A stretch of 64,000 bases of DNA, taken from contig NW_026262679.1 in NCBI RefSeq assembly GCF_021869535.1, positions 39,494,001-39,558,000 of the forward strand, in the 5' to 3' direction. Shown piece after piece: positions 1-47,622 of the stretch. The stretch comes from Mytilus californianus (lineage: Eukaryota). The stretch's first letter is position 1. The number at the start of each line of letters is the position of its first letter. Below the pieces are notes generated by a model. The model was not told the DNA's origin. It searched no databases and worked only from the letters and a program-made list of their open reading frames with translations. The translations under genes were made by a program, and so were the position numbers.

Positions 1-122
1 GCTTTACACAGTGTACACCAATGAGTAAGTATAAAACAGATTTTGCAATAATTTAAACACGATGCAATAATATATTCTGGATTGTTCTCCTTATTTGGAT
101 ATTCACATGACTTTCATTACAG

Positions 123-477
123 GTTTGAAGTACATTTTTCTGAAATGGAACAGGAAAACCCCAGAAACAAGACAAAAGTAACAGTAAGAAGAAGAGGTCA
201 GTTTGAAATTACAAGTTATACCATAATGGTAAACGATTAATGGTTTATATATCACCTAGTCTGTCATTTTAATGAGGCAAGAAAATAACTTTTTTCCATG
301 ATAAATTTTATTTATTATTATCTTTATATTCTAATTGAAAGTAATGAAGATGATTGTTCATTTGTATGATCAGACAATTTAACACTTTTCACATAAAGAA
401 TGTCACAATAAATCTACAAATAATCAATGTCTAAACCATAAAATATCTGAATGAATGCTATGTTTATTTCAGATTAA
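123..477 (+). CDS. 3' end (last two coding exons, C-terminal half of the WWE domain) of a tandem paralog of the vWA-MIB/HERC2-WWE gene; the rest lies upstream of the window
   Basis: Exon 123-196 (tacag|G TTT GAA...AGA G|gtcagt) encodes FEVHFSEMEQENPRNKTKVTVRRR. Terminal exon 473-477 gives D-stop (GAT TAA). Near-identical to exons 47040-47113 and 47367-47371 (GAC TGA), with splice sites intact. Confidence 0.85.
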
Positions 478-935
478 TGATAGCTGATGGAAATTTTCAG
501 TGTTGACACTAGTCTTTTGGATAAAGACAACCTAGAGGCAGTTAATCTTGGAACTTTAGTGTTTATCGTATCTGTCTCGTCCATGTGTCTGTTCTTTGGG
601 CAAACAAAATATACTAACATGAAGATCACCTCACTCAATTCAATAATATCAGCACAGTGGGATTAATTAAGGAAGAGCCAAAAAAAGTGTGTTTAAACAA
701 TTTTGACCAACGATATATCAGTTTGATACATATAGTTCAAACCACCTTATCCTCTTTCATCAGAATTATTAAGTCATTAAAAATTTTTTTAAAAAGAAAC
801 AGATACTATAGTAAAATGAAAGTGTTGACCAGGTCTAGTGATATATCCGACTTTCTGATACCCAATACTTTGGCCATATATTTAACAAGGTCTGTTTTGG
901 CTTCTCCGTCCACTGCTGGGGCAGATATTTGAACG

Positions 936-20120: not shown

Positions 20121-23100
20121 ATGGACTCAATTTTGGATGCAGTCCAAGAAATGAAAAGGCAACAGAAAACTGTATGGCAACGTCTAAATTCACTTACGTA
20201 GGTAACATAATATATCGTACGGAAATGAGTCACTTTAGTTATCAACCGTGTTTATGTTTTAAAAGTAAACATGCTGCGATATAATATATTTATAAATTTA
20301 AAATCATTACAAAATTTGTACATCTCATTATAAACACAACAAGTGCCACTGCTGCAGCGGGAATGGCTAATCTTTCAGAGCACATGTCTTCATCAAAGTA
20401 TTTGGTGATATTGTGATCTTCAGATTTTAGTTGTCTTTGTCATGTTTTGTGGGCAGTTGTTCTTCTTTCATTTTTTTTTTCATTTGACCATTGAGATGTC
20501 TTTGTTTTGAAAATATGTTTAATGCACCTCTTGTTCTTGTTAGAAATTTTTTAAAAAGCTACCATTCTGATTATTAAATCCCAATTCAATTTGGTGATAT
20601 CAAGACTGCTGCTATGAAAACATGTACAAAACTTCGGTAGAATAATAGTTTGTCTTTTCAATATTACAGTGTGTATGACTGATAAACCGTGACATATCGA
20701 AAGAAAACCTCAATCTAGAGCTGATTTGTATGGTTATAAGTACCTTATTTTATAACGCATATCTGTATTTCTATAGCAATAAAGTGTTTAAAGTAATCTT
20801 AAGCTACAATCTGAAAACACATTTCTAAGTTAGGAAGAAGTCATTAAAGTTACTTAAAAAGAGACAACAACCCGACCAAAGAGCAGAAAACAGCCCAAGA
20901 CCACTTACCATGCTTACAATGCACCATTAGCAACATGACGGGTGCCACTAGTAGATCAGAATATGCTTATAGTTCCGGAGCACTTGAGATCTTCCAGTTT
21001 TTGGTGGGGTTCATGTTAGTCTTTAGTTTTCCTTCTAGTATTTTGGTCTCGTGGTAGCGTGTTCGCTTCGAGTGCGGGAGGTCGTGGGTTCGAATCTCGG
21101 CTGGGTCAAACCAAAGACTTTAAAATTGGTATTTGCTGCTTCTCCAAGCAAGTGGCATTAAGGAGTAAGAGCAAAGACTGGTTGGCTCGGAGTCATAATA
21201 ATGTGTCCGGTTGAGGTGACATGTCTTCCTGTGGACTGTTACGTTGTGAGCTAGCACGTTAAATATCCGACTAAGCATTGCGGTCTAGTACAAAGCAGGG
21301 TAAATATTCATATTACATTAACATGTTCTCGTCCTGAATATGCATATTAATTTGCCGCTGGACGTTAAGCATCCATCCATCTTCTGATCTAGTATTTTGT
21401 TAACTTGTTTGTCTTTTAGTCCTCTTTCGTTTTTTTCCATGGCGTTGTCTTTTTATCTAGAATTATGATTTTTGAATGTCCATTTATCTTCCGTCTCTTT
21501 TTTAATACACCATATGAATGTTTAATTTACATACCACTAATTTGTTGCGCTCATATTAAAACTTATTGAAAGCAAACCAATAACGAATTTTAGTAATTCT
21601 TAAAGCCCGTAATTCCAAAACTTTGTGCAAAATATTAATGTCGCTGAGGCCATCTATGACTGATATCAATTGATTTTCTCATTTATGAACAATAAATGTA
21701 CAAAAAAAATATGCATGTCTGGTATTTCATTCATTACCGGGGCGATGATTATCAGGTTGATGATAGCATCGGCGTTAACCGTCCACCAACACTAGTATCG
21801 ATTCATTGATGGATACTGTTTGAAGATTTGATACCTGAAATAAGTTTTCACTAAATATTCTATCGGAATCGTCAACTTCTTCCTTATGGAAATAATACGG
21901 GTTTATTTTCGTTTCAGCTTAGTTGAGAATTCCAAGCAAACGATCAGACGACTGGAAAGTAAGTAGTTATGGTTAATCATTTGTACACACATTAAATATG
22001 TGTTTGATCGAGTTTGTTTCCAATAATTTGCCTGCAAATTGACGTCATTCAATTACATGTATTCAGTATTGTGATATGTAACGCCACTTCTTATCGAATG
22101 ACGTCTGTAGTCAATTCCACAGTCTGTGCATTTACAATAACGTTACACAATCACAGTCGACGTTTGCGGGATATTTTATATGTTTTATTTTGGAAAATTA
22201 AACGAGCATTGCATTTGAACATGAATATCAGTAATGTGTTTATAGAGCCGGTGGGATATAATCATTATATTTATCAGAGACAAATAATACTAGTATATGT
22301 CTCTCAGATTATAGAGGTTATAAATTGCATCATATTGTCCAGTAATTATCCTTTAAAATGAAACAGCAAACTATTTTGTCGATAAGATAAACAGTTAAAG
22401 GAATATCATTGTTTTACATTTTATGATTTTAGGAGCTACATTATCATCTTGTGAATAGGAAACATCAAACTCTATGTTATATTGAAATTGAATAGAATTT
22501 TCAACCCCGAAACATTAGAAGTTTTAGTTAAAGCAAAGCGAACTATAAGATTTATATCAAGCTTTAAGAAAATTGAAAAACTAGGGGAAAAGCTATAAAA
22601 GACCAACTATATTTAGAGAACTATTCATAAATATTTTGCGTACATGTTTAAACAACTGTTTTACAGATCTGGAAGAACATGTACAAAACTTAGAGACACA
22701 GTGCGATAACAATTCTACCAAACTGACCGATATTAATCTACTAGTTCATTCTTTGTTAGAAGTAGTAAACAAATTTGTTGTTGCGGTAGAAAATCTTCAA
22801 GACAACAGAACTTCAGAAAAGACGAAAAATCTATTAGATACAACAGATAAAAGAAATAATAAAAATAGAAATCATTCTACAACTACTTGTTTGACAAATA
22901 TCAGTGTACCTGTAAGAAAAGATTCGGACGAGACTGAAAATAGTAGAAATGCCAAATTTGATCAGCCTATTTATAATATGAATTCAGAACACACAATTAA
23001 ACCCGACATATGTAAGACAATGTGTCCATACAAAACAGATTTATCAATAGACGTTTACAACGTGTCAATTTGTAATGATTTTTCGAGAAGAACGCATAAA

Positions 23101-26100
23101 GATGACAGTAAGTATATTACTGATGCTGAAGAACATCGATGCACATGTGATGATAATGGTCAATTTGCATGTAAAGAAGAAGACAATGTGCCAAACAAAG
23201 ACAGAAGTATCCATACAACTCACACCGTACAGCTTTCAAAAAACAGCATGAATTGTACTAAGCCGAATAAAAGGTGCACCATCAATAAATTTGGATATAA
23301 ATGCAAAAGTTGGAATATACAAAATGATAATCGTATGAGCTTTCATGGTACTTCGCCAAGATTTGAAGGTAATGACTTTCCATCTTCTACTTTTCAAGTT
23401 CCAGTAGAATGCTCACCAGTACCTAATATTAAGCAAACTGAGAATTTTTCTCTCGAAACAAAACGCAGATTCATGTCACTGAAAAGGTATGTCACATAAT
23501 TACATGTTAGATATTATGTACATTAAATCACTTTGTAGCTCTGCTTTTCAACATTTGCTACCTTTAACAAAGGGGTTCGTAGAAATTGCAAGAAATCTCA
23601 ACTATTTTATGTTCAAGATGCGTATCATTTTCCGAGCACCACTTACAATACAACAAGATAACCAATTAGAATCCATGAAAATTAATTCCACATTGAGGTA
23701 ATCCCAGTACTACTGTAATATTTATTTCACATTGGAACAACACTTACCCGTTGTGAAATAAAAAAAACCCAGGCGAAAAAAACATATTCTTAAAAATGCA
23801 ATAAAAGCCATGGAATTTCATTTCAATGATATTTAAAAGAGGTCCATAAAATACAACATTTTAGATGAATACTATAAATATACTGATATCTGTCTAAAGA
23901 GAGAACTTTTGATCAACGAAAGATGTATATACAAACCAAAGGAAACACTATAAAAAAACAAGTGCTGTACTAGATTTGCAAGTATCAAATATATAACGGA
24001 AGAAGTTCAAATATAAATAATGTAACATTTGTTTCCGTGTGCATTTGAATCCTACATAGATATATTTTGAAGTAGATACTAAAGTGTTGAAACTAAACTG
24101 TCTAAAAAAAACAAATATAAGTAATTAACCTTTTTACAATAATGATGTAGATATCATAAATTGGTCACAACGTGTACTGAATTGTATTGTCAATATAGAG
24201 ATTTGTTGTGGAAGAGTGATTCCAATTGCAGACAGAAATATAATAAAAAGTTTGATTTCGCATCCATATTCTAACAGTAATATTGTCTATAAAGTTAACA
24301 AATATTTCTCTTTGGCTTAATAAACATATTGCAAAAGGTTATAACTTTACGCCTTTTGTTCTAATATTTTTTCTCGTATTGTCATACAAATAGAATTGAA
24401 AATGTATTAGAAAATATGTATACATTAAGGTTTTGTAGCGATTCAACTGTAAAAGACTGTGAAGATGAATGTGAATTGATTAATTTACCACAAATGAGTA
24501 CTAGATGTACAAAAAATGACTTTGGATACAAAACCACAAGATCAGATATTCAATATGATAACCGTGTGAGCTTTCATGGTAGTTTAGCATGTTTTGAAGG
24601 ATGTATAATTTCATCTTCAACAATTGAAGTTCCAGAAGAATATTCACCAGTACCCAATATAGAGCAACCTTTCATTCATCATACCAAACCAAATGTTGTA
24701 CCGTCAGAAAGGTATGTAATAAACTATATATATAACAGGTTAGATATTGTACAATTGAAGCTTCTGTATTTATCTGTACTGAATTATACATATGTTTAAC
24801 AACTATGGTAGCCTTATAACGAAGTATAGACTATTTTTGTAATTATTTTTTTCTGTAGAAATGACTGATTGGTGTTCCCTTACACCGCATAACCGCAAAC
24901 GATTTATCGCTACAAATGCCTATCTATATACTTGGACATATTGGAGGTAGTTTTAGTTATTTGCAATTTGTACATTTCCCTTTGATCTTACTGCCTAATA
25001 ATTTCAAGATCATGGACAGGACTTGATACTCGAAAATATTAGGCAATGACGGCATGCATCAGTGCAGCAAGGTCACGTGATCATGTCCGACCGCTTCAAT
25101 TTATCAATGAAATGCACGCGACTTCATTCATACAACCGAACAACTATCCCAACGTTTTGTACGCTTAAAAGTAGTTTTACTTATAATTTCATTTTACTTC
25201 ATATTCTCAACCAAAAGAAATAGCCGATAAACAGTCGGAAAGCTGACCCCGGTTTGACCCCATTTCTAAAGACAACAATGAAAGTCATGTGACTACCATA
25301 TCTGGTCATTTTTTTTTTTTGTCATTTTTTCTTCAACTAAAACGATATCAAATGAAATCAAAGCATGCTGTACGTTATAAATGCCAACTGCGTATACTTT
25401 CTAGAGGTTCTAACAATTCTAATGTGTATAGTGTGAACATGAAACAAACCGGGATGCGGTATTCAGTACGTAGGTGAAACTGGACGATATTTATCTAAAC
25501 GCACTCAAGAACATCTGTATCGTTTTAAAAGACCCAATAAATTCAAAAGTATCATTTATCAACACCTTAAGAAGCACAATCATCCTATTAAATATTTAGC
25601 AGTTCAAGCTGGTGAATCTCATTCAAAGTTTGTACGATCACGGAAAATAATTGAATTAAATTGGATTAAAAAATTACAGACAGTCTACCCTCTTGGTCTT
25701 AATGATAATATCATGGGAATTGGTAATATATCAAGAACCGATTCTGTTAACATTTTGGATATAGTTTCTAAAACTGTTCGTAAAAACCGTTCTCATGGTC
25801 GTAGAAAAAAATCGCAATCAAAGAAAATTTCGGACCAATCATACCAATATTTCGGACCTAATTTCTATTTCAAAAAACAACGGCAGACATTATCTGTTAA
25901 ACAAAGCTCTGTTCATTACCGGTTAATAAGTTAAATAAAATTTTAGAGGATTGCAACACAATTTCATATAGCAGTCCTAAGTATGAAATCGTTCAAATTA
26001 TAATGGCATATTGTTATTCTAAACTGTTTCCCAAAATTGATCGCCCTGAAGATCATAAAAAACAGTTTATTAAAATAAAGTATGTTAATAAAGGTTTTGA

Positions 26101-29100
26101 TTTTGTAAATATTGCCGGTATTTTTAACGACCATTCTGTTAAAGAAAAAATTCCGGGATATTTTGATAATACTGAGCTCCCTCTTATTTGTTATATTTAC
26201 AAGAAATCTACCCGGAAATTTGTGTTTAATTATAGTCAATTGTGTAAAGATGTTAATATCAGTGAAAATACACCTACTTCATGTAATTGCAGTAATTCCG
26301 AATACATTTATGGACCCATTTCCCATGTTATAACAGGAGATCTTAACATCGTTCAAGACCGAGAGTTAAAATCATTCCTCAGTAAAGGACCTAAATATCG
26401 TCCCCCGTCAATTATTAATTGGAATGAGTGTCGTAATATCATCCACGACTCACTCCATACTTACTGTTTGAAATGGATAAAACGGGAAAAAGCTGACAAA
26501 AAATCTTTGGACTCTTTTTTTTAATTCAGTAATGAACATAGTTGATATACGTATTCAACATTTTAAAGAACATTTTACTCTTAACAATAACCACAATAAA
26601 CCTATTTCTCGTATCAAACATAAACTAAAAGAACTAGCCAAGGAATTTGTTTTTGTCCCGGCCGATAAAGCTGCTAATAATATTATTATTGTTTGACGTA
26701 AATTTTACATTGAGGTTCTGAAAAAAGAAATCACCAATTCACCAACATTCCAACTGACTCCATTTTCAGAAAACGACATCTGTAACAAACATAAACTTTT
26801 AGCTACCGCTTTACAAGCAGAACCAAATACAATGAAAGTCCCAACTATGTATTGGCTTCCGAAGCTACACAAAACACCTTACAAATATAGATTTATTTCG
26901 TCTTCAAGCCATTGTTCCACTACTTAATTGTCTATTCTTCTTACCAGTACACTTGGTACAAACAAAAACCTGATAATAAATTGTTCAAATAAGGCCTTTG
27001 AAAATAGTGGAATTAATTACTTTTGGAGTGTCAAGAACTCGTTGGAAGTACTTGATAAATTACATGCATATATTGGTGATTTTGAATCTGTTCAAAGTTT
27101 TGATTTTTCTACCCTATATACCACATTGCCTCACATTCTCATTAAGAAAAAATTCACACACCTAATTAAATGGGCATTTAAAAAGTCAGAATGTGAATAT
27201 ATATGTTCAAACTCTTTTAGGTCATTTTTAGTAGCAATAAACAAAAAAACTATGTCAATTGGACATGCTTTGATACTATATATGCCTTGAATTTTTACTA
27301 GATAACATTTTAGTTTGCTTTGGAGATTCCGTATATCGTCAGGTTATCGGAATTCCAATGGGGACTAACTGTGCACCACTTATTGCGGACCTTTTTTTGT
27401 ATTGCTATGAGTTACAATTTATGACAAAAATCAGCAAAGACCCATCGAAACAACATCTGATACACAAATTTAATAATACTTTTAGATATTTGGATGATAT
27501 TTTGGCTCTCAATAATGACGACTTCAGTATGTATACTAAAGAAATTTATCCTGTTGAACTTACTTTAAATAAAGCTAATACTAACAATGACCACTGCCCT
27601 TTCCTCGATCTTGATATCTATATCATTAATGGAAAGCTTAATACTAAAATATATGATAAAAGAGATGATTTTTCATTTCCTATCGTTAATTATCCATTTT
27701 TAGATGGTGACGTTCCCTTGTCACCATCTTACGGTGTTTATATATCTCAACTTGTACGATTCGCTCGTGTATGTAACAATGTTTTAGATTTTAACGAGAG
27801 AAATTTATGTATTACTGAAAAATTATTACATCAGGGTTTTCGATATCACAAACTAGTCAAAACATTTACTAAATTTTATCATCGGTATAAGGACATCATT
27901 CGTAAATATAGCTCAACATGCAGACTTCTTATACGTTCAGGTATTTCACATCCAATTTTTTATGGAAATATTCTTTATAAAGCACAAAAATGTCAGTATT
28001 CACCTCTGAAGCTAACAAAACCTTTAAATAGACTTATTAAGAAGGGATATAGTTACGATACTGTTGTCAGGTCATTAAAGATTGCATATTTATTTTGGCG
28101 TTAATATTGATTCACTTATAGGGTCTTTGCATCGGCACTAAACACAATTATTTAAAAACCAGTTGTTGGCATGACACGGGTTATGTTCTTCTCATATATG
28201 TTATGATGGTATGATACTAAACCCCTAACGGGAAGGATTGTGCCTGATATTCATATGATGAAGACATAATCTTTCAATCAGTTTAATTGAAGTCTGGAGC
28301 TGGCATGTCAGTTAACTGCTAGTAGTCTGTTGTTATTTATGTATTATTGTCATTTTGTTTATTTTCTTTGGTTACATCTTCTGACATCAGACTCGGACTT
28401 CTCTTGAACTGAATTTTAATGTGCGTATTGTTATGCGTTTACTTTTCTACATTGGCTAGAGGTATAGGGGGAGGGTTGAGATCTCATAAACATGTTTAAC
28501 CCCGCCGCATTTTTGCGCCTGTCCCAAGTCAAGAGCCTCTAGCCTTTGTTAGTCTTGTATTATTTTTAATTTTAGTTTCTTGTGTACAATTTGGAGTTTA
28601 GTATGGCGTTCATTATCACTGAACTAGTATATATATTTGTTTAGGGGCCAGCTGAAGGACGCCTCCGGGTGCGGGAATTTCTCGCTGCATTGAAGACCTG
28701 TTGGTGACCTTCTGCTGTTGTCTGTTCTATGGTCGGGTTGTTGTCTCTTTGACACATTCCCCATTTCCATTCTCAATTTTATGAGGATGACATATTAACT
28801 GAGATACAATAATTTCAAACAGCTTATTGTTGGCAAACGTACCCGTGAATTTGTCTTTGTAATACAATAAAATTAATCTAATTATATGAATAGAGAGTTA
28901 AAATATATTAAAGGCTTCTTTCAATATATCCATTTTTGTTGCTCTGTTTGTTGCAAAGATGAATCCAGAATTTCTTCATGCGATAAACACATACCTTAAA
29001 TGATCACAAAACAAGAAATGTTTTCTAAGGAACTTTAAAAAATGCATTTTTAAGTTTTTCTCTCTGCATTTATCCACCAATTCATTGATTTCTAGTTTTA

Positions 29101-38100: not shown

Positions 38101-41100
38101 CAAATTTTTAACCTCACTGAAGAACATTTAAATTGTCCACATGTTAATAACTTATTCAAGATGTCATTAATTTCCGATGTGACTTTTTACTGTTGGCTTG
38201 GGATTTCTAACGGGGATACTTTCAATAAATCGTTCATTTAGAGCATCTGCAAATTGTTCAATATTCAGTGTTCGTATATTTCCTTGTTTGTACTTTTTTG
38301 CCCTTTCTAGCTGGTTTTCAATTTGTATTATTTCGTTGTGTTATATTTGACCTACAACAAATAATGACGACTATTTGATATCTAGAATAACGTAAGCTAA
38401 AAATCTTCCTGACCCCTTTCCCAAAATGAAATTCTCGTCCCCAAATATAATAGATAGGTAAGAGAAATCCAAAAGTTATTCATATAATTTTTATTTATTC
38501 AGGCTGTGGCATCACATATTGCTTCAGAAATAAGAAATTTTCCAAGTAAACAGACAAGGGATGTCATTAAAAGGAAAATCAGAGAGGCATCAAGTCAGGA
38601 CGATCCACATGTAAGAAGTTCATTTTAGGAAATCAATACCCTGGCACATGGTCATATGCGTGACCCAAGTTAGGAATTACTTCGGTGGTTATTCTTTGTT
38701 TGCACCATTTTCCTTGTTATTCAAGGATGTGTAATATTTAGTCTTTGTTCAATTTATTTACAGTTTTTAAGACAAGGCGAATTTAAAACTGGACGTATCG
38801 TATAGAAGAATATACATTGATTTCTAAGGGAGCAACCATTTAACTTCAAGGGTGGGGTTATGGGTTTTTTTGTCTGATTCAGAAATTTTTTTCGCGCTAT
38901 CAATCAAATTATTTTTTTTCAAAATTCAACACTATAATATTTTTTTACATCAAATTGGGGATCAGAATATTTTTGGTGGAAAAAACCATAAGCCCGACCT
39001 CCCCGTAAGTCGTCATTTGAGATAACCTGGGCACGCCCAAGCTGATCTCAAAAACCTTACCATCACTATCATAGACCACAACGAGGGTTGGTCAAGGGCA
39101 AACAGACTTGCTCGGGAAAGTTTTTGGATAAGAAAGTTAAGGACAGTTTCCTCAGAGGGCATTAATGAAAAAAACATAAAATGAGTCCCTACCATCACTT
39201 GTTTCCTGTATATAACTCAGGCTTCAGTACAGGACTCTCACAGTTTTAAGGAATGTATTCCTCCTCCCAAAAATCAATATTGAAAAAATTTACCAGAGTA
39301 CTGATTCGTGATAATTTGTATGATGTTCAAGATTATTATTTCAGTTCGACTACCACATGTCAAGATAAGAATCATTTGACATCTTACTGATGAAGGATAT
39401 TAGTTATCCGAAATATTAAATATTTGTTCATGATTTTTTTTTTGGTAATGTTGTACCCTTTTAGACTTGTTTGTTATATATTATATTTTGTAGTGTACTG
39501 CATCATATTTATATGATCCATCGCCTCGTAAGATTTATCGTTGGCTATTATTCAGACATTTGATATAAAAATATAAATATATATGAAACTAAGGTCATCA
39601 CTATAAGAGTGTTACGGCCAGACAAATTGGTCGAGCATTATTATTATTTAATATGTATCAAATAAATAGATAGATATTGACATATTTATCCAAATAACTC
39701 GCCTTTTTAACAACTTGATTGAATTTCGATTTTCACTACTGGCAATTCGATTGGTGTCGCAGATAAATATTACCCTTTCAGAGCACGCGATATCACTTCC
39801 ACTTGTGGTTAGACTTTAATGTTTACAGTTTGTATATTATCTTCTTTCCCTCATTGTTTGTGTATGAGATGGGAGTATGCGTTCTAATCGTAAGCCAATG
39901 CAAACACATATGGGAAAACACAAAACGGAACAGAAAAGCGCTTAAGTAAGGAGTTTGAAAGTTAATTCGTTGTTCCAATCAAGATTATTTTAAGAGATGT
40001 TCATTATAAGTAGCCAGTATTAAGGGACATTGTTTTCAGACAGAACTTTGATATTTTTTATATCCCAATTGCATAATTATCCGCAACTCATGGAAAGGTA
40101 TGCGTCCAAATCCCTGCAATGCTATGCGAGTACTTTCATATCTGTACTAAGTTTCTTTAGTGTTTTTTGTTAGTTATTTTGTGCTTTGTATTGATCTGAT
40201 GAGTTAAGTCCTTTTCAACAGATTTTTATAGTTTCTGCTTATGTTGTGCTGTTACACCACTGTCCTAGGTTAGGGGAGGGTTGGTTTGGTGCCCGTAAAC
40301 ATGTTAATGCCATATCTGCATGTGCCTGTCCCAAGTCATGAGTTTGTTTGTTGTTTTTTTTTTCACTTGGCCTCTGGTTTTGTAGTTTGAATTGTTTTAC
40401 ATTTGTCATTTCGGAACCGTATAGAGCTTGCTATGAGGTAGGGGTGTTGCTCATTGTTGAAGGCCGTATGGTGACTAACTTTTACGACATTTGGTATCTA
40501 TTGGAGAGTTGTTTAATTGGCAATCATACCACTTTTTTTTTATATAGTTTAATGTATCGTTCTACTATATAAAATTGAGTACATGCCAAAAGGAGGGGGT
40601 AAGTAGCAGCAGGACAGATAAATCTCAAGATAAAAACAAAAAAACAAACAACAGCGGAGAAACTATTTTTGATTGATAAATACCATACAATATATAAAAA
40701 TGGACTTCCCCTTTTTTTATTATACTGTTTTCCAAATACACAAGAACATACAAAAACAAATTAATAAATGTTAGATTCTTTAAAAAAAATATCAACAATT
40801 GTATATGATTTCAAAAGAAAAAGCAAAGATGCGATAAAAGTACTGAAATGCTTCTAGAGAGGATACATTGGAAAAAAAGAGAATACTATTCTTAATCTTG
40901 ACAGTCACTGGAATGTCTCTAATGAACAACTAGATAGCCCATACAACTATGCCTTTAGCGTTGATATAGTGATTCTGTATGATATTTATAATTATGAATG
41001 CTTTTGTTATTGAAGGAAAATATAAAGGTGTAAAACATCAATTGTAAATATAACTGGTATGATTAAAAATTGTTTAGACACTTTATTTTTCCTTTATAGG

Positions 41101-44100
41101 ATGACTGTTTAGATATGGTTATGGATTTTATTAATCCTCTAAGTCATGAAAACGAAAAAGGAATGTTTTTGGAACTGAACCTAAGTACCTTGCAACTTGG
41201 CGATAGGGTTCGTCGGGGACCTGATTGGTCGTTTGGTGATCAAGATCGTAATCTTCCTGGAACAGTCGTCGGTCTTAACGGAGGTGGTATGTATAGTTTT
41301 TTCGATATTGTTTTTATTTTTTCTGAATATGGTGCGGTTGAATTCTTTCATATAGCAAACATGCAAACACAAGTGTAAACAAATTTATACTGTAAGTTCT
41401 ATTCACTTTTAGTTTTTTTAAAGGAGAGACAAAGTGGCAGTCAGTAAATGCTTTCGAATTTAGACAAATTCAAATATTTTTTATATATGATGAAGACGAT
41501 ATGATGATGATTCTTGAGTCAACATACCAGTTTCACAATTTAATCAAATTGTATATGCATGATGACAGCGCATAGTTTGAGAAGTGTACTTTGCTGAAAC
41601 ATATGTTTTAGATGTGTTTCACCTATGCTTAAATTTTCCTAGTTTTTAGATTTTTTTTTCAAATATTGCATTACCTTGGATAGGTTAAAATAATTTGTTC
41701 TTATCAATTAGTGTGCGCATTTTTCTTTAAAGGTACAATTTGGGTAGAATGGGATCATGGCGATAAAAATGTATATGCGTATGATGAACAAAGACACCAT
41801 TATAAAATTATGAAAGTGAATGAACCCAGAAAACTTGTTGATGGGATTATCGCCGTTGGTTGCAGAGTTGTTAGAGGTAATTACGAAATACATGTATTTT
41901 GATATCCTTATTTCAATTAAGATTATATGTGCATATAAAAAGTTTATTATTGTCTTTTTGAACAAACTATTCAAATAAGAACTAACTTTATAGAAAACCG
42001 ACATCTTCATTGTGTTTAGATGGTTATTTCTACATATAAACATATTTAGGCCAGTAAGGTAACATAACAAAATAGTTTTTTATATCTTATTAAGTAAATG
42101 TTCCAATAATATTCATGAAATCTAAAGCTATAACTGTTAATTTCACAACAATACGCTTGAGACAATATCTTATAGGACAAGATTGGAAGTTTGACGATAC
42201 CGATGGTGGACCAGGTAGTATAGGAACTGTTTTAGATGTAAGAAGAGAAGGCAATGTTGTGGTGAGTAGAACCTTTACTACTACAACTAACGAATATATG
42301 AAAAAACAAATTCAAAACCTAAAATTCAACAATAAGCCAGTTTTGGCACAACTATTTGAAATCGTTTGTTTCCATTGTTCTTCAATATACAAATTAGTTT
42401 TGTTTGGTTTTAGTACCACTGATGATTCTTGGTAAAGACGAAACACGCATATGTGTTCTTAATTACAATTTTGGTATCTGTAATGAGTTTTTGAAGAGAT
42501 CACATATGTTTCAACAAGTATATTGTTATTGCCTTACATAATGTATATTTGAAGACTTTTTCATTTTGTATCATTGTAGGTAAGATGGGACTGTAAACGA
42601 ACATGTCTGTATAAGATGGGATGTAAAGGGCGATTTGAAATTCGTTTGCAGTAAGTATTTAAATTACACGGTTGTCATTCAAAGAGTTATATATCAATGA
42701 AATGCACACACTTTGACAAAAATGGACATTGTTTATATATAGATATATATAAACGAAATGTTACTAGGATTCTTAAATACATATTAAACATTATTTTTTA
42801 TTATCTTATTACTATTTCTTTGGTTTGCATTTTTACTCGAAAGTAGTATATTTTGGGAAATACGAACTTGAATGTGTTTCGATCAATCATTTAGATAAAT
42901 TTGGTTAAAACAATGCCCCAAAACTTTACTTGTACATTATTAATTTGCAAGATAATAATTTGACCTCATTAAATCCCTCTTAATTCGCCTTATTTTAAGA
43001 TGATTTTGAATTTGCTATGCATGTACACACTACAAACCAGTAAAAGTCTGAAATGGCCTATATCTGTACTCGACTGTACTGATTTTTACTCGACCAGTCT
43101 GAATTGGTCTGAATTTTACTTAATACTACTCGACCCAGTCTTAACCATACTCGACTGTACTGATTTGTACTTGACCCTTATCTTTGCTATTGAAAATAGT
43201 CTAAACTATTACTCGACCAGTCTGAAACAGTCTTAACCCAGTCTGGACCAGTACTCGACCAGCTCTCGACCTATTTTTTCAGTCTGAACCATACTCGACC
43301 AAAGGTCTGAACAATACTCGACCAGTCTGAACCATACTTTACCAAATAACCTCTGCTTTATAATTTTGATTGTTTAAATAACTTTCTCTTTAACTTACAT
43401 GACAACAGCCACAATTAAAAAAAGATATATATAAAAACATTTTTTACATTCTTTAATAATACATGATTCTCTTAGATTTGGCAAATCGAGATAGTTAAAT
43501 TATCTAATTTTAAAGTCTGAGTCTTGTTAAATAAAAGACTTGTTTTACCTGAAAACCACACCTATACTGAGGGTAATAAAACCTTATTAAAAATAAGGTG
43601 TTTTTTGTTTGGCATGTGTTTTTTTTTTAAACAAAACTTGATTTTCCTAAATTCCTAAATAAAAACGAATGTAGGACAGAAAGTCACAGGACAAAAAGTC
43701 ACAATTCAGTTTTGAGGTTATTTTTCTTTGAACAATAGAACACTTATTTTTAAAAAAACATTTTTGTATTTTTCTTGAAACAATATCAATAATGATCAAA
43801 TAATTGTTAAGAAAACAAAATGTTACAATGTCTTGGTACTTAAATGGCTTCATGGTGCCAAGAAATATATCCTTTGCATGATTAAAATTTTATAAATCTT
43901 TATTTATCAAATTAAGTCTTATGAACAATTTCCTAAACTGTAAAATGAATATGTGTCATAAAAAGTAAACATTTCAGGATCTTTCTCATAAATATTCAAT
44001 CAATTGTATACAAATTATTTGTGACTTTTTGTCCTATCAAATTTGTGACTTTCTGTCCTGTGACTTTCTGTACTTAGGTTTCATGGTTATATACAATAGT

Positions 44101-47100
44101 TATATAACTATCTTTTTAATGAGGTAACAACAGCCAACAAAATCACTGACATTGTTTAACCTTATATCAGAAATATATCTATTCCTATTCATAATTTGGG
44201 ATATATATATATTTTAAAAGGGATAAAAAATTCAAGAAATGAATAAAATTTTTCTTCTGATAAGGGGTAAACTATAAAGTAATACATCCTGCTTGACGCA
44301 CACTGATTAAAAAGATCACACCTGGTCAGAGAGTAATAAATTTTAAATAACATCCATTGAAAATTACAACATCCTGTAAAACTTAAATAACAAGGCCTTT
44401 GAATTCACTAGATAAGTAATACACGAGTTTAAGAAAAATATGGTTTTCTTTTTACCTGTAAAACACCTGTACTGAGGTAATTAAACCATTAAACCTTATT
44501 AAACTGCTTCTTGTATGCCATGTCTTTAATTTTGACAAAACGTATTTAAATTTAATTAAAATAAATTTCTACTGCTACTTTGGAATACATTTCCTTTTTT
44601 AAAAGGTTATCAAGGATAAAAAGATGAAAGTTTTATTATTATTATTATATTAAATTTTTGATTTTACAAAACAAAGGTGTCAATTCTAACATTTATTAAG
44701 TTGCTTTATATACTATTTTATATATATTTTGATAAAAAAAAAATTGAATAACATTTAAGATATTTGAATAATGGTTGAAAGTTATAGTATTTTTGATGCA
44801 TAAATCAATGTGAACATGATATCATGTATATGAAAATTCATTTAACGAACTTAATTTATTACATGATATTTTTTTAATCCAACCAGAAATTTGATCACCT
44901 TGTTTTATTTTAATTTTAAATGTGATATACATTTTATATATATATATATATATGAATAACAGTTCCTAAATTAATGAAAAAATAATATAGATAGATACAA
45001 AAAATAGGTCTAGGTTGGTTAAGACTTGGTCGAGTATGGTTCAGACTAGGTCGAGTATGGTTCAGACTAGGTCGAGCATGGTTCAGACTTGGTCGAGAAT
45101 GGTTAAGACTATGTCGAGTATGGTTCAGACTCGTATAAAATGGTTAAGTACTGGTCGAGTAAAGGTCGAGTACAAGTTCAGACTGTTTAGTATGGTTCAG
45201 ACTACAGTCGAGTAATATCAAGTAAATTTCAGACCAATTCAGACTGGTCGAGTAAAAATCAGTTCAGTCGAGTACAAATATAGGCCATTTCAGACTTTTA
45301 CTGGTTTGTAGTGACAGTTATTAAAAAGAATGTCAGCTACAAATAGTAAACTAGGGATTTAATCGGAAGACCGATTATATTGACTGATTTGACACGCAAA
45401 AATTCATTCTTATACAGGTTACAGATAAAACAACGATGTATATTACTTTTTATATTTGATATATAATATCAAACGTTAACATTTTCATTATTCTATTGCA
45501 CGTGTTATTTTTATTTAACTAGCTTGTTTATATTTACCTACCTATGTTTATATCAGGATTTGATTTCTATCGGCTATCATCGAAGGTCATGTCGATTGAT
45601 AATCAGTAGATGACGTTCAGTCCCAAAATGTAAAAAAAGAAATCATATATTGTTTATTGTAGCCTATGGAACTTATGTAATTTGGATATGCGTTTTAGTA
45701 TGTTATAAATCGAATTTAATAGTTTCATAATTTGGCAGGTAATGCCCCTTTTTTAATACTGACACCAAAGGTATTTAATTTATTTCTCCCTTAACATTGC
45801 ATTATCTTATATAGCATGTCCCACAAATTAAGCTTTTTGTTGATCTAATAATTGTATGTTGATATTTAACAGATGGTGAAAATAATTATATGGAAGCTTT
45901 GCTTTTATTTCAAGGTCAAACTTAATATTGACAATTTTTTTTTTCCGAGTTCACAAATTTAAACATCGGTAAAGATGTAAAGACTCGTATTGGATTATAT
46001 GGAACAGCTATCTGTATTATTATATTTCAAAATACATCAACTTATATCTTATCATTATAAAGAGGTGATAACGCCCAAACTAGTCGACAAAACAGGAACC
46101 GAATGCCAAGACGTCGGCATGCAAGACGCCTATCAATGTCAGACGAGGAGGAAGAATATGTATCATCTACAAAACATGCTAGCGACTACGTCATTCCAAT
46201 ATATTCAGATTCAACAGGTACTCTAGTACTCTACTTTATGAATTCTTTAATTTATTTACAATTTTATATGTAATCAATAGAATATATAAGCTCAATCAAT
46301 ATGATGATGATTCAAAAAGAAAATGTGTTATTTTGTTTGGTTTATTTTTAGATATATTTTAACAATAATAAAAACTTGAACCAATGTTCTTTTAACACAG
46401 TAAGCGCTATTTGGGAGTATAAAGACGGTTCATATTGGAAGGAGTATCCTGATGATATAAATGTAAAAATAGAAAGGGCTTACCAGAGAAAACAAAGGAA
46501 AACCATTATCGAAATGGATCGTACTACGTAAGTAAATATAACGTTATATTTCAAGCTGTTGCTAGCATGGTTTAGTGAAAAATATGTTTATACATCAGGT
46601 ACGTTGTAATGTCATAACTTTAGCCAGGATTAATTCACTATTAAGAATGTTCGCTACTCTGTTTCAAAATGACAAGCTTTTCAAAAGACTGTTATAAAAT
46701 GATAGTATATAAATAAAGGAACTAAAAAAGCAGAAAAAAATGAAGGGTCCGTATGCTTGTTTTTGAGATATAAGCCATTGAACATTTGGCGGGAAATGGT
46801 ACGTTCTCTCTAGATTTTTCATACTATAACATTGTCCACTTTTCTCTTATAAAAACTATGAAAATATAAAAGGATTTTATAAAATTTTTCAAATATGGCT
46901 TTTAAAACTATATGAAATAAAATTATGGAAAGAAAAGTAGGGGTCAGTGGACAAAATTTTTGCAATAATTAAAACACGATGCAATAATATATTCTGGATT
47001 GTTTTCCTTATTTGGATATTCCAATGACCCTCATTACAGGTTTGAAGTACATTTTTCTGAAATGGAACAGGAAAACCCCAAAAACAAGACAAAAGTAACA

Positions 47101-47371
47101 GTAAGAAGAAGAGGTCAGTTTGAAATTACAAGTTATACCATAATGGTAAACGATTAATGGTTTAATTTTAATGAGGCAAGAAAATAACTTTTTTCCATGA
47201 GATATTTTATTTATTAACTTTATATTCTAATTGAAAGTAATGAAGATGATTATTCATTTGTATGATCAGTCCATTTAATATTTTCACATAAAAATATCAC
47301 AATAAATCTACAAATAATCAAAGAATAAACCATAAAATATCTGAATTAATACTATGTTTATTTCAGACTGA
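20121..47371 (+). CDS. Uncharacterised multi-exon gene: N-terminal low-complexity/repeat region, vWA, 2x MIB/HERC2, WWE (~940 aa)
   Basis: Phase-compatible exons: 20121-20201 (ATG 20174), 22667-23486, 24439-24711, 29096-29154, 30148-30213, 31067-31201 (GC donor), 31371-31490, 32194-32265, 34691-34792, 35895-35921, 36261(or 36251)-36343, 37940-38026, 38503-38610, 41100-41286, 41733-41876, 42176-42261, 42580-42650, 46063-46217, 46401-46527, 47040-47113 and 47367-47371 (stop). The sum from the ATG is 2829 nt, open throughout. The true start and the 35921/36251-36261 junction are uncertain. Confidence 0.85.
21044..21382 (+). mobile_element. tRNA-derived SINE, full length
   Basis: A box TGGTCTCGTGG, B box GGTTCGAATC (21087-21096), conserved body and a (CCAT)n tail. 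Confidence 0.85.
25300..28780 (+). mobile_element. Naiad-type Penelope-like retroelement B (N-terminal GIY-YIG, CxC linker, RT); near full length, decayed; candidate selenoprotein ORF; in intron 3 of the vWA gene
   Basis: EN: GCGIQYVGETGRYLSKRTQEH…ELNWIKKLQTVYPLGLN (25452-25710). Linker: TSCNCSNSEY…HVITGDL. RT: ADKAANNIIIV*RKFY…YWLPKLHK…GIPMGTNCAP…RYLDD…PFLDLDI…SQLVRFAR. Native stop at ~28139-28141. Frameshifts (several in homopolymers) and a TAA at 26925-26927. The 5' boundary is approximate. Confidence 0.92.
28187..28264 (+). promoter_or_regulatory. SECIS element (type II) in the 3' UTR of Naiad B
   Basis: UCUUCUCAUAU-auguu-AUGAU(28203-28207)-GGUAUGAUACU-AAA(28219-28221)-CCC cuaac GGG-A-AGGAUUGUGCC-UGAU(28245-28248)-auuc-AUAUGA-u-GAAGA, starting ~45 nt after the RT stop. 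Confidence 0.88.
31067..38026 (+). CDS. vWA domain exons of the above gene
   Basis: HITLVLDISERM…FEAMKTAAVQYI…IGLAVFG…GNAPILGGL…HMIIFTDG…KIYYVPVG…LEEAVRQTHGKVI follows the vWA strand/helix order. Confidence 0.85.
32645..33467. mobile_element. Internally deleted MULE-like DNA transposon
   Basis: TIR GGTC(A/G)TTTGAGCG with subterminal GGACATTTGAGCG repeats. The internal remnant QRPSKIIRTELQ…SKAIYRKRRKSHPALPKSREE resembles invertebrate Mutator transposase N-termini (from memory). Flanked by ATTG on both sides. Confidence 0.7.
34005..34159. mobile_element. Foldback (palindromic) MITE
   Basis: gaaataattcatggg…atcgtgattttaccacgggttg…ttttacc and its reverse-complement arm ending cccatgaattatttc. 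Confidence 0.8.
41100..42650 (+). CDS. Two MIB/HERC2 domains of the above gene
   Basis: LGDRVRRGPDWSFGDQD…GTVV…IWVEWDHG…Y and VGCRVVRGQDWKFDDTDGGPGSIGTV…VVVRWD…YKMG both match the G-x-RV-x-RG-x-DW-x-(W/F)-x-DQDG…GTV…V-x-WD signature. Confidence 0.9.
43028..45313. mobile_element. Non-autonomous CACTA/EnSpm-type DNA transposon
   Basis: Ends are CACTACAAACCAGTAAAAGTCTGAAATGGCC… with a near-perfect inverted copy ending …GGTTTGTAGTG. 3-bp TSD ACA. Subterminal ACTCGACC repeats at 43060-43345 and 45010-45290. Confidence 0.9.
43672..44076. mobile_element. MITE nested inside the CACTA element
   Basis: TIR TAGGACAGAAAGTCACAGGACAAAAAGTCAC with an inverted copy …GTGACTTTCTGTCCTGTGACTTTCTGTACTTA. Confidence 0.7.
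46401..47371 (+). CDS. C-terminal WWE domain of the above gene
   Basis: AIWEYKDGSYWKEYPDDINVKIERAYQRKQRKTIIEMDRTTFEVHFSEMEQENPKNKTKVTVRRRD* fits the W…W-x2-Y…IE-x-AY…M-x-Q-x-N…RR pattern. Confidence 0.85.
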
Positions 47372-47622
47372 TGATAGCTGATGGAAAACTTTCAGTGTTA
47401 GCACTAGTCTTTTGGATGAAGACAACCTAGAGGCAGTTAATCTATGAACCTGAATGTTTATCGTGTCTGTTCTCGTCCATGCGTCTGTTTTTTGGGCAAA
47501 CAAAATATACTAACATGAAGATCACCTCCCTCAATTCAATAATATCAGCACAGAAGGAAAATGTTGTTCGTTCGATCCTACTGTGTCAGCTTGTGCTGTT
47601 TATTGTGTATCTTCCCTTTCTT

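What the first reader, a model, noticed from the sequence alone, without database searches (positions are those of the whole stretch)
20121..47371. Unfamiliar vWA + 2x MIB/HERC2 + WWE protein with no catalytic domain
Seen: a continuous ~940-aa reading frame over ~21 exons combining these domains and ending directly after the WWE. Known: MIB/HERC2 domains are substrate-binding modules of E3 ligases (Mind bomb, HERC2, HECTD1, CUL7/9). WWE domains occur in PAR-dependent E3s and PARPs (RNF146, Deltex, PARP7/11/12/14) and often bind iso-ADP-ribose. I know of no characterised protein with this combination, and no RING, HECT or ART domain is visible. Inference: a bivalve-lineage adaptor or decoy linking ADP-ribose signals to ubiquitin-system partners; its tandem duplication hints at an expanding stress or immune family.
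Basis: partly seen in the sequence, partly recalled or inferred. Interest (0 to 1): 0.75.

Follow-up and report, generated by a model that had tools for sequence, protein, structure and literature searches.

The report
Non-enzymatic vWA–MIB–WWE scaffold gene in mussel
This is a real, transcribed 22-exon California-mussel gene encoding a protein made only of binding modules (coiled coil, vWA, two MIB/HERC2, WWE), one member of an uncharacterised family that is found from sponges to hemichordates and has multiplied in mussels.

Summary
A 22-exon + strand gene (window 18754-47371) translates exactly into RefSeq "uncharacterized protein LOC127734540" of Mytilus californianus (985 aa).

Architecture: coiled coil, a ~340-aa disordered region with a repeated conserved motif, vWA, two MIB/HERC2 domains and a WWE. 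No RING, HECT or ART domain was found.

RNA reads support all six splice junctions from 41.7 to 47.4 kb. The last exon adds two bases and TGA, so the protein ends one residue after the WWE. The last WWE exon of the tandem paralogue LOC127734539 lies at window 124-195.

The "bivalve-lineage" inference is wrong. The vWA-MIBx2-WWE core also occurs in oysters, scallops, gastropods, a brachiopod (there with a CARD), hemichordates and a sponge. No vertebrate or ecdysozoan member turned up.

This gene belongs to a Mytilus-only clade that lost two of five vWA metal-site (MIDAS) residues. It also lost two phosphate-contacting WWE residues, while keeping the adenine-contacting ones.

Most likely it is a cytosolic, non-catalytic adaptor. 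ADP-ribose binding is plausible but weakened and untested. An immune role rests on two single domain fusions. I found no paper describing this architecture.

The parts
18754..18774 (+). Coding exon 1 of isoform X1 (residues 1-7, MGTDNVS)
   Evidence: Exact match to P0151 residues 1-7 with a GT donor at 18775. Not tested with reads.
20121..22812 (+). Exons 2-4 (first part; exons 20121-20197, 21918-21958, 22667-...) encoding the N-terminal coiled coil (residues 8-95).
   Evidence: AlphaFold model has a single helix at residues 8-95, pLDDT about 56-81. The block is conserved across Mytilus paralogues. Exon map.
22813..30155 (+). Rest of exon 4 (to 23486), then exons 5 (24439-24711), 6 (29096-29154) and the start of 7. 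These encode a ~340-residue disordered region (residues 96-433). It carries two copies of a conserved motif (NDFGYK..DNRV.FH..CFEG..PVPNI[EK]Q) at 23260-23439 and 24482-24667.
   Evidence: pLDDT < 50 over residues 95-433. The motif was found by HMM in all Mytilus-clade members. The internal repeat is 54% identical.
24712..29095 (+). Intron 5, carrying a + strand Penelope-like ('Naiad') retroelement. ORFs 25443-25931 and 27274-28101. Not part of the protein.
   Evidence: Weak RVT_1 hit. The earlier scan notes name it Naiad B. It lies between exons that join exactly in P0151.
30171..38601 (+). Exons 7-14 (30148-30213, 31067-31201, 31371-31490, 32194-32265, 34691-34827, 36251-36343, 37940-38026, 38503-38610). 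They encode the vWA domain plus a helical extension (residues ~439-700). Degenerate MIDAS residues: D475 (31132-31134), S477 (31138-31140), R479 (31144-31146), A546 (32217-32219), D581 (34747-34749). Intron 8 is GC-AG.
   Evidence: Pfam VWA/VWA_2 over residues 470-624. Model pLDDT is 70-94. PDB matches are generic vWA folds such as Rpn10, TFIIH p44 and ITIH1. MIDAS columns.
41100..42650 (+). Exons 15-18 (41100-41286, 41733-41876, 42176-42261, 42580-42650) encoding two tandem MIB/HERC2 domains (residues ~735-800 and 808-865)
   Evidence: Pfam MIB_HERC2 with two stretches, E 4.8e-23. Foldseek match to the Mind bomb 1 MZM region, 4xi6, 24% identity. RNA joints at 41876/42176 and 42261/42580.
46063..46217 (+). 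Exon 19: disordered basic/acidic linker (residues 867-917), including RRLSMSDEEEE
   Evidence: pLDDT < 50. RNA joints at 42650/46063 and 46217/46401. RRxS and acidic Ser sites by regular expression only.
46401..47113 (+). Exons 20-21 (46401-46527, 47040-47113) encoding the WWE domain (residues 921-983). Pocket residues: Y924 (46418-46420), F961 (47041-47043), Q970 (47068-47070), N972 (47074-47076), V979 (47095-47097).
   Evidence: Pfam WWE E 6e-12. A profile of the family WWE matches DTX1, TRIP12, HUWE1, PARP11 and RNF146 WWE structures. Residues were mapped through the HUWE1 and TRIP12 alignments and PMC11269756. RNA joint at 46527/47040.
47367..47371 (+). Start of the terminal exon: AC completes the Asp985 codon, then TGA. 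The 3' UTR follows.
   Evidence: RNA joint at 47113/47367 in raw reads (2 reads) and in contigs of three runs. The translation ends ...VRRRD*. The same ending is seen in the Mytilus paralogues and orthologues checked.
124..195 (+). Last WWE coding exon of the upstream tandem paralogue LOC127734539. The duplicated block is 41-657.
   Evidence: tblastn at 93-96% identity. The sequence ...ENPRNKTK... matches the P0152 tail. The block 41-657 ~ 46958-47553 is 90% identical in nucleotides.

Best explanation
Shown: the locus is Mytilus californianus LOC127734540. It is a transcribed 22-exon gene whose product has no enzymatic domain. In order, the product carries:
- an N-terminal coiled coil;
- a ~340-aa disordered region with two copies of a conserved linear motif;
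- a vWA domain whose metal-binding MIDAS site is degenerate;
- two MIB/HERC2 beta-barrel domains;
- a basic/acidic linker;
- a C-terminal WWE domain.

It belongs to an old animal family with the core vWA-MIBx2-WWE. That family gained long N-terminal extensions in molluscs and multiplied in Mytilus.

Inferred: it works as a cytosolic scaffold. The coiled coil would multimerise it. The MIB pair would bind short peptide motifs of partners, as in Mind bomb 1, and the vWA would bind another protein surface. The WWE would dock the complex onto an adenine-nucleotide-type mark such as ADP-ribose or PAR.

In this Mytilus clade both small-ligand sites have drifted. MIDAS went from DxSxS/T/D to DxSxR/A/D. 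The WWE went from Tyr to Phe and from Arg to Val. This copy therefore probably binds metal not at all and ADP-ribose weakly or differently. It would act as a modified adaptor, or as a regulator of the paralogues that keep intact sites.

A stress or innate-immune setting is suggested only by a CARD fusion in Lingula, a kinase-RNase (Ribonuc_2-5A) fusion in Potamilus, and the lineage-specific expansion.
For: - Gene and product: exact 22-exon mapping. RNA junctions and the stop are supported. Pfam domains pass their cut-offs and no other domain is found.
- Structure: helix at residues 8-95, disorder at 95-433 and 869-917, and confident vWA, MIB and WWE folds.
- Family: the same architecture, ending within a few residues of the WWE, in Mytilus, oysters, scallops and most gastropod models checked (two gastropod models and a transcript contig run tens of residues further). 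It also occurs in a brachiopod, hemichordates and a sponge. Short forms are 52-54% identical across phyla.
- MIDAS: 80 of 125 family vWA domains have the complete DSS[ST]D pattern. All 35 degenerate ones come from Mytilus. The sampled ones form one clade with SH-aLRT 100.
- WWE: the adenine-contacting Gln and Asn and the stacking aromatic residue are kept. The phosphate-binding Tyr and Arg are present in the sponge and hemichordate proteins but are Phe and Val here.
- MIB pair: resembles the Mind bomb 1 MZM region, which binds Jagged1 peptide (entries 4xi6 and 4xi7).
- Fusions: CARD at 27 bits against a cut-off of 23.9. Pkinase 3e-45 plus Ribonuc_2-5A 4e-30.
Against: - No binding, partner, localisation or induction data exist, so everything about function is inferred from domains.
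- The two phosphate contacts lost in the WWE may abolish ADP-ribose binding. The residue mapping rests on sequence alignment, and a one-residue register shift would place a Lys at the Arg position.
- The CARD and kinase-RNase fusions are single gene models that could be annotation merges. No other N-terminal domain was found in 49 family members.
- Expression in the one raw RNA run is low, at 2-5 reads of depth from a 6% sample.
- Absence from vertebrates and ecdysozoans rests on word-indexed searches capped at 8000 candidates.
Confidence: 0.55

Rival explanations
1. Decoy or dominant-negative paralogue. The Mytilus clade has lost ligand binding at both the MIDAS and the WWE pocket. It would act by sequestering partners of the ancestral, intact-site paralogues (LOC127734652 and LOC127734816 types), through the MIB domains or by mixed coiled-coil assemblies, without reading ADP-ribose at all.
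For: Two of five MIDAS residues, and the WWE Tyr and Arg phosphate contacts, are replaced in this gene. Intact-site paralogues coexist in the same genome. The degenerate clade is the one that multiplied: six M. californianus members fall in it.
Against: The WWE Gln, Asn and aromatic residues, and the domain as a whole, stay under constraint: 97% identity between the tandem copies and 88% to the M. edulis orthologue. A fully dead pocket would be expected to drift. Most paralogues keep the Tyr, and several have Lys at the Arg position.
Confidence: 0.2
2. Substrate receptor for a separately encoded E3 ligase or PARP. The protein supplies MIB and WWE substrate-recognition modules in trans to a catalytic partner, so the 'missing' enzymatic domain sits in another gene.
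For: MIB/HERC2 and WWE are best known as recognition modules of E3 ligases (PMC11269756). The MIB pair resembles the substrate-binding region of Mind bomb 1.
Against: No E3 or PARP gene lies next to it. The downstream neighbours are a DUF167-like gene and an F5/8 type C gene, and the flanking ORFs have no Pfam hits. No family member found carries a RING, HECT or ART domain.
Confidence: 0.2
3. Artefact: a chimeric or mis-joined gene model, a pseudogene, or an extracellular vWA matrix protein like the shell proteins of bivalves.
For: A retroelement lies in intron 5. The RefSeq model comes from the same assembly. Junctions upstream of 41.6 kb were not checked with reads.
Against: The reading frame is open through all 22 exons with consensus splice sites. 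All six tested junctions are supported by RNA. The architecture is collinear in dozens of species. The N-terminus is a polar helix with no hydrophobic leader in the sequence (no signal-peptide predictor was run). MIB and WWE are intracellular domain types.
Confidence: 0.03

Closest known systems
Unnamed vWA-MIB/HERC2x2-WWE family (for example Oscarella lobularis P0206, Ptychodera flava P0204, Saccoglossus kowalevskii LOC102801576, Magallana gigas A0A8W8HVC8, Mytilus edulis XP_071166214.1)
   Same: Same domain order, and the oyster, scallop, Solemya and most Haliotis models checked also end within a few residues of the WWE. The core clusters with these proteins in a tree.
   Different: The ancestral short forms (about 430-580 aa) start directly with the vWA and have an intact MIDAS site and the full set of WWE ligand residues. 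This gene has a 430-aa coiled-coil plus disordered extension and degenerate MIDAS and WWE phosphate contacts. No member has a described function.
Mind bomb 1/2 (MIB1/MIB2) E3 ligases
   Same: Two MIB/HERC2 domains. Foldseek matches the MIB1 MZM-REP structures 4xi6 and 4xi7. Some databases auto-name family members 'MIB2'.
   Different: No ZZ finger between the MIB domains, and no REP, ankyrin or RING domains. True MIB2 proteins score far lower against the family profile, at E 1e-26 or worse.
PAR-reading WWE E3 ligases (RNF146, DTX1/2/4, HUWE1, TRIP12)
   Same: WWE fold. The best PDB matches are DTX1 (E 1e-19) and TRIP12 (1e-10). The adenine-binding Gln is conserved, and the aromatic position is Tyr as in RNF146.
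   Different: No RING or HECT domain. The equivalent of Tyr1658 is Phe, and the equivalent of Arg1676/Arg827/Arg163 is Val.
Intracellular vWA proteins (Rpn10/PSMD4, TFIIH p44/Ssl1)
   Same: Closest solved vWA folds and sequences. All are cytosolic or nuclear protein-interaction vWA domains.
   Different: Only generic similarity, at 10-22% identity. These proteins have no MIB or WWE partner domains.

Membership tests
WWE domain (Pfam PF02825) | Profile score above the curated cut-off | tested here: met
   46.2 bits against a cut-off of 21.1, residues 921-983. Confident beta/alpha fold, pLDDT 84-92.
WWE domain as ADP-ribose/PAR reader | Ligand residues: Gln (adenine), stacking Trp/Tyr, Tyr and Arg (proximal phosphate), as set out in PMC11269756 | tested here: inconclusive
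   Gln970, Asn972 and Tyr924 are present. Phe961 replaces the Tyr and Val979 replaces the Arg. Both are intact in the sponge and hemichordate members. This is a sequence mapping only; no binding assay was possible.
MIB/HERC2 domain (PF06701) | Profile score above the cut-off, in two copies | tested here: met
   81.3 bits against a cut-off of 33.5, two stretches. Structural match to the MIB1 MZM region.
vWA domain (PF00092 / PF13519) | Profile score above the cut-off and a Rossmann-like fold | tested here: met
   VWA_2 at 31.7 bits (cut-off 27) and VWA at 25.4 bits (cut-off 23.8). Foldseek and HMM matches to many vWA structures.
Metal-dependent (MIDAS) vWA | DxSxS ... T/S ... D motif | tested here: not met
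   The gene has D475-I-S477-E-R479, A546 and D581. 80 of 125 relatives have the full motif, and all degenerate ones are from Mytilus.
Mind bomb E3 ligases | MIB-ZZ-MIB, REP, ankyrin repeats and C-terminal RING fingers | tested here: not met
   Only the MIB domains are found. There is no ZZ, ankyrin or RING at E <= 0.01.
RING/HECT WWE E3 ligases and WWE-PARPs | A RING, HECT or PARP catalytic domain in the same polypeptide | tested here: not met
   None is found in the product. The transcript ends one codon after the WWE.
vWA-MIBx2-WWE family (unnamed) | Collinear vWA, two MIB/HERC2 domains and a WWE at or near the C-terminus; core groups with the family in a tree | tested here: met
   P0151 nests in the mollusc clade (SH-aLRT 99) and is sister to M. 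edulis P0003 (99).

The most novel reading that the evidence does not exclude
vWA-MIBx2-WWE proteins are an ancient, strongly conserved animal family of non-enzymatic ADP-ribose readers and adaptors. They were missed because vertebrates, insects and nematodes lack them. They would feed into death-fold or RNase-type innate-immune or stress effectors, as the CARD fusion in Lingula and the kinase-Ribonuc_2-5A fusion in a unionid mussel suggest. The expanded Mytilus clade would be a set of rewired or decoy versions that lost metal and phosphate contacts.
Probability: 0.25. Interest if true: 0.7.

Novelty: new variant of a known kind. Interest (0 to 1): 0.5.

Why it matters
WWE and MIB/HERC2 domains are known almost only as recognition modules bolted onto E3 ligases or PARPs. 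Here they sit with a vWA domain in a protein that has no enzyme part at all.

That combination is old and constrained. Sponge, coral, hemichordate and amphioxus versions are 52-54% identical to each other. It is absent from the standard model animals searched, which would explain why nobody has studied it.

If the intact-site members bind poly(ADP-ribose), they would be a new class of free-standing PAR reader or adaptor. The Mytilus expansion has both small-ligand sites altered. It would then be a natural experiment in rewiring such a reader, and a candidate component of the large lineage-specific stress and immune repertoires of bivalves.

For annotation, the result shows that labels such as 'E3 ubiquitin-protein ligase MIB2/HECTD1/HERC2' on these proteins are wrong.

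Tried and rejected
- I first doubted the 5' half (20-31 kb) because it holds a retroelement and low-complexity ORFs. It is real: the 22585-23496 ORF is exon 4, and the retroelement lies wholly inside intron 5.
- The ORF piece at 40195-40338 that I had taken for an exon is not one.
- A second full copy inside the window does not exist. Only the last exon and downstream spacer of the upstream paralogue are present.
- Flanking ORFs of 90 aa or more in 1-20 kb and 47.4-64 kb gave no Pfam hit.
- Paper searches for the domain combination in four wordings found nothing on this architecture. One paper lists a 'Mib-herc2' orthogroup as expanded in bivalves, without architecture (PMC8382680).
- The earlier notes of this scan hold nothing on it.
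- Searches for a specific vWA relative by PDB sequence profile and Foldseek gave only generic vWA folds.
- A Pfam survey of 49 N-terminal extensions gave only the single Lingula CARD and coiled-coil-type noise.
- Regular-expression scans for tankyrase-, TRAF-, KEN- and D-box-type motifs in the disordered region gave nothing convincing.
- No RNF146 residue-level alignment was printed, so I mapped WWE pocket residues through HUWE1 and TRIP12 instead.


Full report
**What is in the sequence**

The window is AT-rich animal DNA (GC about 0.31) with short exons. Stop-free pieces on the + strand between 31 and 47 kb already read as vWA, MIB/HERC2 and WWE fragments. Pfam confirmed them on the raw exon pieces.

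I searched the representative protein library with one exon (window 41100-41288). This returned full-length relatives. The best were Mytilus proteins with VWA, two MIB_HERC2 domains and a WWE that ends 1-3 residues before the C-terminus.

A word-index search then brought in P0151. This is RefSeq 'uncharacterized protein LOC127734540 isoform X1' of Mytilus californianus, 985 aa. It maps onto the window at 100% identity in 22 coding exons. With the splice sites placed (20 GT-AG introns and 1 GC-AG), the joined CDS of 2958 nt translates exactly to P0151 plus TGA.

20121 is the ATG of Met8 in exon 2, and 47371 is the last base of the stop codon. Isoform X1 adds seven residues from a further exon at 18754-18774.

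The contig is JAKFGE010000003.1 of assembly GCA_021869535.1. The RefSeq model is therefore not independent of the window.

**Independent support**

I laid one raw stranded RNA-seq run and three runs of RNA contigs on 41651-47650. Every predicted junction there is seen with GT..AG ends:

| Junction | Raw reads | Contigs |
|---|---|---|
| 41876/42176 | 5 | yes |
| 42261/42580 | 11 | yes |
| 42650/46063 | 8 | yes |
| 46217/46401 | 3 | yes |
| 46527/47040 | 7 | in three runs |
| 47113/47367 | 2 | in three runs |

- Exonic reads lie on one strand only.
- The last junction matters most. Exon 21 ends with the first base of a codon, and the terminal exon supplies 'AC' and then TGA. The protein therefore ends ...VRRRD*, one residue after the WWE.
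- All Mytilus-clade members checked end the same way, '...RR[RKS][DE]*'. Oyster, scallop and some gastropod models also stop within a few residues of the WWE.
- The 'further exons add a catalytic domain' refuter therefore fails for the transcripts sampled.
- Junctions upstream of 41.6 kb were not tested with reads, because only one call was allowed. They rest on consensus splice sites, the open frame, and collinear conservation in M. edulis, M. trossulus, M. galloprovincialis and M. coruscus.

**Anatomy of the protein**

Pfam on the whole product gives only four families, all above their cut-offs:

| Family | E-value | Residues |
|---|---|---|
| MIB_HERC2 | 4.8e-23 (two stretches) | best stretch 808-865 |
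| WWE | 6e-12 | 921-983 |
| VWA_2 | 2.5e-7 | 471-582 |
| VWA | 1.9e-5 | 470-624 |

An AlphaFold model built on 28 family sequences shows, in order:
- one long helix at residues 8-95, a likely coiled coil;
- no confident structure from 95 to 433;
- a confident vWA with a helical extension (439-722);
- two beta-barrel MIB domains (739-865);
- a disordered linker (869-917);
- a confident WWE (921-984).

The disordered region is not featureless. A ~60-residue motif (NDFGYK...DNRV.FH...CFEG...PVPNI[EK]Q) occurs twice in this gene, at window 23260-23439 and 24482-24667. It is conserved in every Mytilus-clade member.

There is no hydrophobic leader. Foldseek finds generic vWA folds (ITIH1, TFIIH p44, Rpn10, archaeal ArnA) and the MZM region of Mind bomb 1. 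No RING, HECT, ART, ZZ or ankyrin domain is detectable.

**Tandem duplication**

- The last WWE exon recurs at window 124-195. Its sequence matches the tail of P0152 = LOC127734539.
- The repeat runs on through the 3' UTR and spacer: 41-657 ~ 46958-47553 at 90% nt identity, and 681-2485 ~ 48838-50490 at 78-86%.
- At least eight paralogues lie on this one chromosome: LOC127734446, -447, -539, -540, -543, -545, -652 and -816.
- In a maximum-likelihood tree of the vWA-MIB core (54 rows, quick search, SH-aLRT only), LOC...540 pairs with M. edulis P0003 (99).
- LOC...539 pairs with M. edulis and M. trossulus proteins (98).
- The duplication therefore predates the split of M. californianus from the M. 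edulis complex, and both copies have been kept since.

**Distribution**

A profile of the core and a profile of the short forms show that the architecture is not a bivalve invention.

| Form | Taxa |
|---|---|
| vWA-MIBx2-WWE | Oysters, scallops, Solemya, gastropods (Haliotis, Nucella, Babylonia, Batillaria), the brachiopod Lingula, hemichordates (Ptychodera, Saccoglossus, Glandiceps), the sponge Oscarella |
| vWA-MIBx2 without WWE | Anthozoan corals, amphioxus, several heterodont and unionid bivalves |

- The short forms (about 430-580 aa) begin directly with the vWA. They are 52-54% identical between sponge, coral, hemichordate and amphioxus. That is unusually strong constraint for an unstudied protein.
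- No vertebrate, arthropod or nematode member appeared. Only true MIB2 proteins did, with far weaker scores.
- This is 'not found', not proven absence, because both searches scored only 8000 word-sharing candidates.
- All members are labelled 'uncharacterized', or carry transferred names (MIB2, HECTD1, HERC2, MIB1) that their architecture does not justify.

**Ligand sites**

vWA metal site:
- Of 125 family vWA domains, 80 have a complete MIDAS pattern (DxSxS...S/T...D). These include the sponge, hemichordate, coral, amphioxus, oyster, scallop and gastropod members and some Mytilus paralogues.
- 35 have D-x-S-x-R/H...A...D/N, and all of these are from Mytilus.
- The sampled degenerate ones form one clade (SH-aLRT 100). 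Its sister is a Mytilus pair with an intact site.
- This gene has D475, S477, R479, A546 and D581.

WWE pocket:
- I mapped the pocket through the HMM alignments to HUWE1 and TRIP12 and the residue roles given in PMC11269756.

| Role | Reference residue | This gene |
|---|---|---|
| Adenine-binding Gln | strictly conserved Gln of the E3 WWE domains (HUWE1 Gln1667 by my mapping) | Gln970, kept |
| Phosphate-pocket Asn | HUWE1 Asn1669 | Asn972, kept |
| Stacking aromatic | HUWE1 Trp1619 / RNF146 Tyr107 | Tyr924, kept |
| Proximal-phosphate Tyr | HUWE1 Tyr1658 | Phe961, changed |
| Proximal-phosphate Arg | HUWE1 Arg1676 / TRIP12 Arg827 | Val979, changed |

- Phe961 is also found in the neighbouring copy 539, while the M. 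edulis and M. trossulus orthologues and the other M. californianus paralogues checked keep the Tyr.
- Val979 has Lys on either side.
- The sponge and hemichordate proteins have the full canonical set.
- This mapping is by sequence only. A one-residue register shift in the last strand cannot be excluded.

**How it most likely works**

Shown: a transcribed protein made only of interaction modules, from an old and constrained family.

Inferred:
- It is a cytosolic scaffold.
- The coiled coil multimerises it.
- The MIB pair binds short peptide motifs, as in Mind bomb 1.
- The vWA binds another protein.
- The WWE docks onto an adenine-nucleotide mark such as ADP-ribose or PAR.

For the ancestral short forms, with intact MIDAS and WWE sites, a PAR-reader adaptor is a reasonable prediction. 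In the Mytilus clade that holds this gene both small-ligand sites have changed. This copy probably binds no metal and binds ADP-ribose weakly or differently.

That fits either a rewired adaptor or a regulator or decoy of the intact-site paralogues. I cannot separate these two readings.

Two single gene models hint at the setting:
- Lingula LOC106157515 carries a CARD ahead of the core (27 bits against a cut-off of 23.9).
- A Potamilus model joins vWA-MIB to a protein kinase and a Ribonuc_2-5A (IRE1/RNase L-type) domain.

Both could be annotation merges, and no other N-terminal domain was found in 49 members. One paper lists a 'Mib-herc2' orthogroup among families expanded in bivalves (PMC8382680). 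Whether that orthogroup is this family is unknown.

**Comparison with known families**

The protein works like the recognition half of WWE or MIB E3 ligases, but it is not a member of any of them. The defining RING, HECT or ART domain was looked for and is absent. It meets the Pfam definitions of vWA, MIB/HERC2 and WWE, and it fails the MIDAS test. The family it belongs to has no name and no described function in the literature I could search.

**Verdict**

- It is wrong about the bivalve origin and unproven about ADP-ribose and ubiquitin.
- The gene is already annotated (as uncharacterised), so the locus itself is not new.
- The new content is the recognition of an ancient non-enzymatic vWA-MIBx2-WWE family and of a Mytilus clade with both ligand sites altered.
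- Interest is moderate, at 0.5.

Noticed in passing
window 24712-29095 (ORFs 25443-25931 and 27274-28101, + strand): A Penelope-like 'Naiad' retroelement sits inside intron 5 of the gene, in the same orientation. It has a GIY-YIG-like ORF followed by a reverse transcriptase ORF. The scan's earlier notes flag SECIS-like hairpins in it.
   Followed up: partly
window 31202-31370: Intron 8 of the gene has a non-canonical GC donor (GCAAGT...AG). It is the only non-GT donor among the 21 introns.
   Followed up: partly
window 41-657 and 681-2485 versus 46958-47553 and 48838-50490: The tandem-duplication unit includes the last intron, the last exon, the 3' UTR and about 1.8 kb of downstream spacer, at 78-90% nt identity.
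   Followed up: yes
P0151 versus P0152 and P0003 (window exons 2-4 and 20-21): The two M. californianus tandem copies are more alike at both gene ends (coiled coil 91%, WWE 97%) than copy 540 is to its M. edulis orthologue (64%, 88%). The vWA and MIB parts show the reverse. Both copies share Phe961 where the orthologues have Tyr. Gene conversion at the ends is possible but untested.
   Followed up: partly
about window 48.1-54.6 kb (- strand) and from about 57.7 kb (+ strand); L001:40392-46801 and L001:49963-50140: Downstream neighbours in the public annotation are a 142-aa PF02594 (DUF167-like) gene on the opposite strand and an F5/8 type C (discoidin) domain gene. The first exon region of the DUF167-like gene probably explains the GC-rich 52-54 kb stretch. 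Neither is an E3 ligase or a PARP.
   Followed up: partly
P0204, P0206, P0214, P0216 (alignment A7): Short vWA-MIBx2(-WWE) proteins of a sponge, a coral, a hemichordate and amphioxus are 52-54% identical to each other, starting 'MPLDTVLCLDTSGSM'. This is strong conservation for a protein with no known function.
   Followed up: partly
P0205 (Potamilus streckersoni) and P0130 (Lingula anatina): Two single gene models fuse the vWA-MIB core to other modules: a protein kinase plus Ribonuc_2-5A domain, and an N-terminal CARD. Neither fusion was checked against RNA.
   Followed up: no
window 46651-46850 and 43051-43450, 45051-45250: Intronic stretches show very high summed contig depth in the RNA runs (up to about 3000) on both strands. 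These are probably transcribed repeats from elsewhere in the genome.
   Followed up: no
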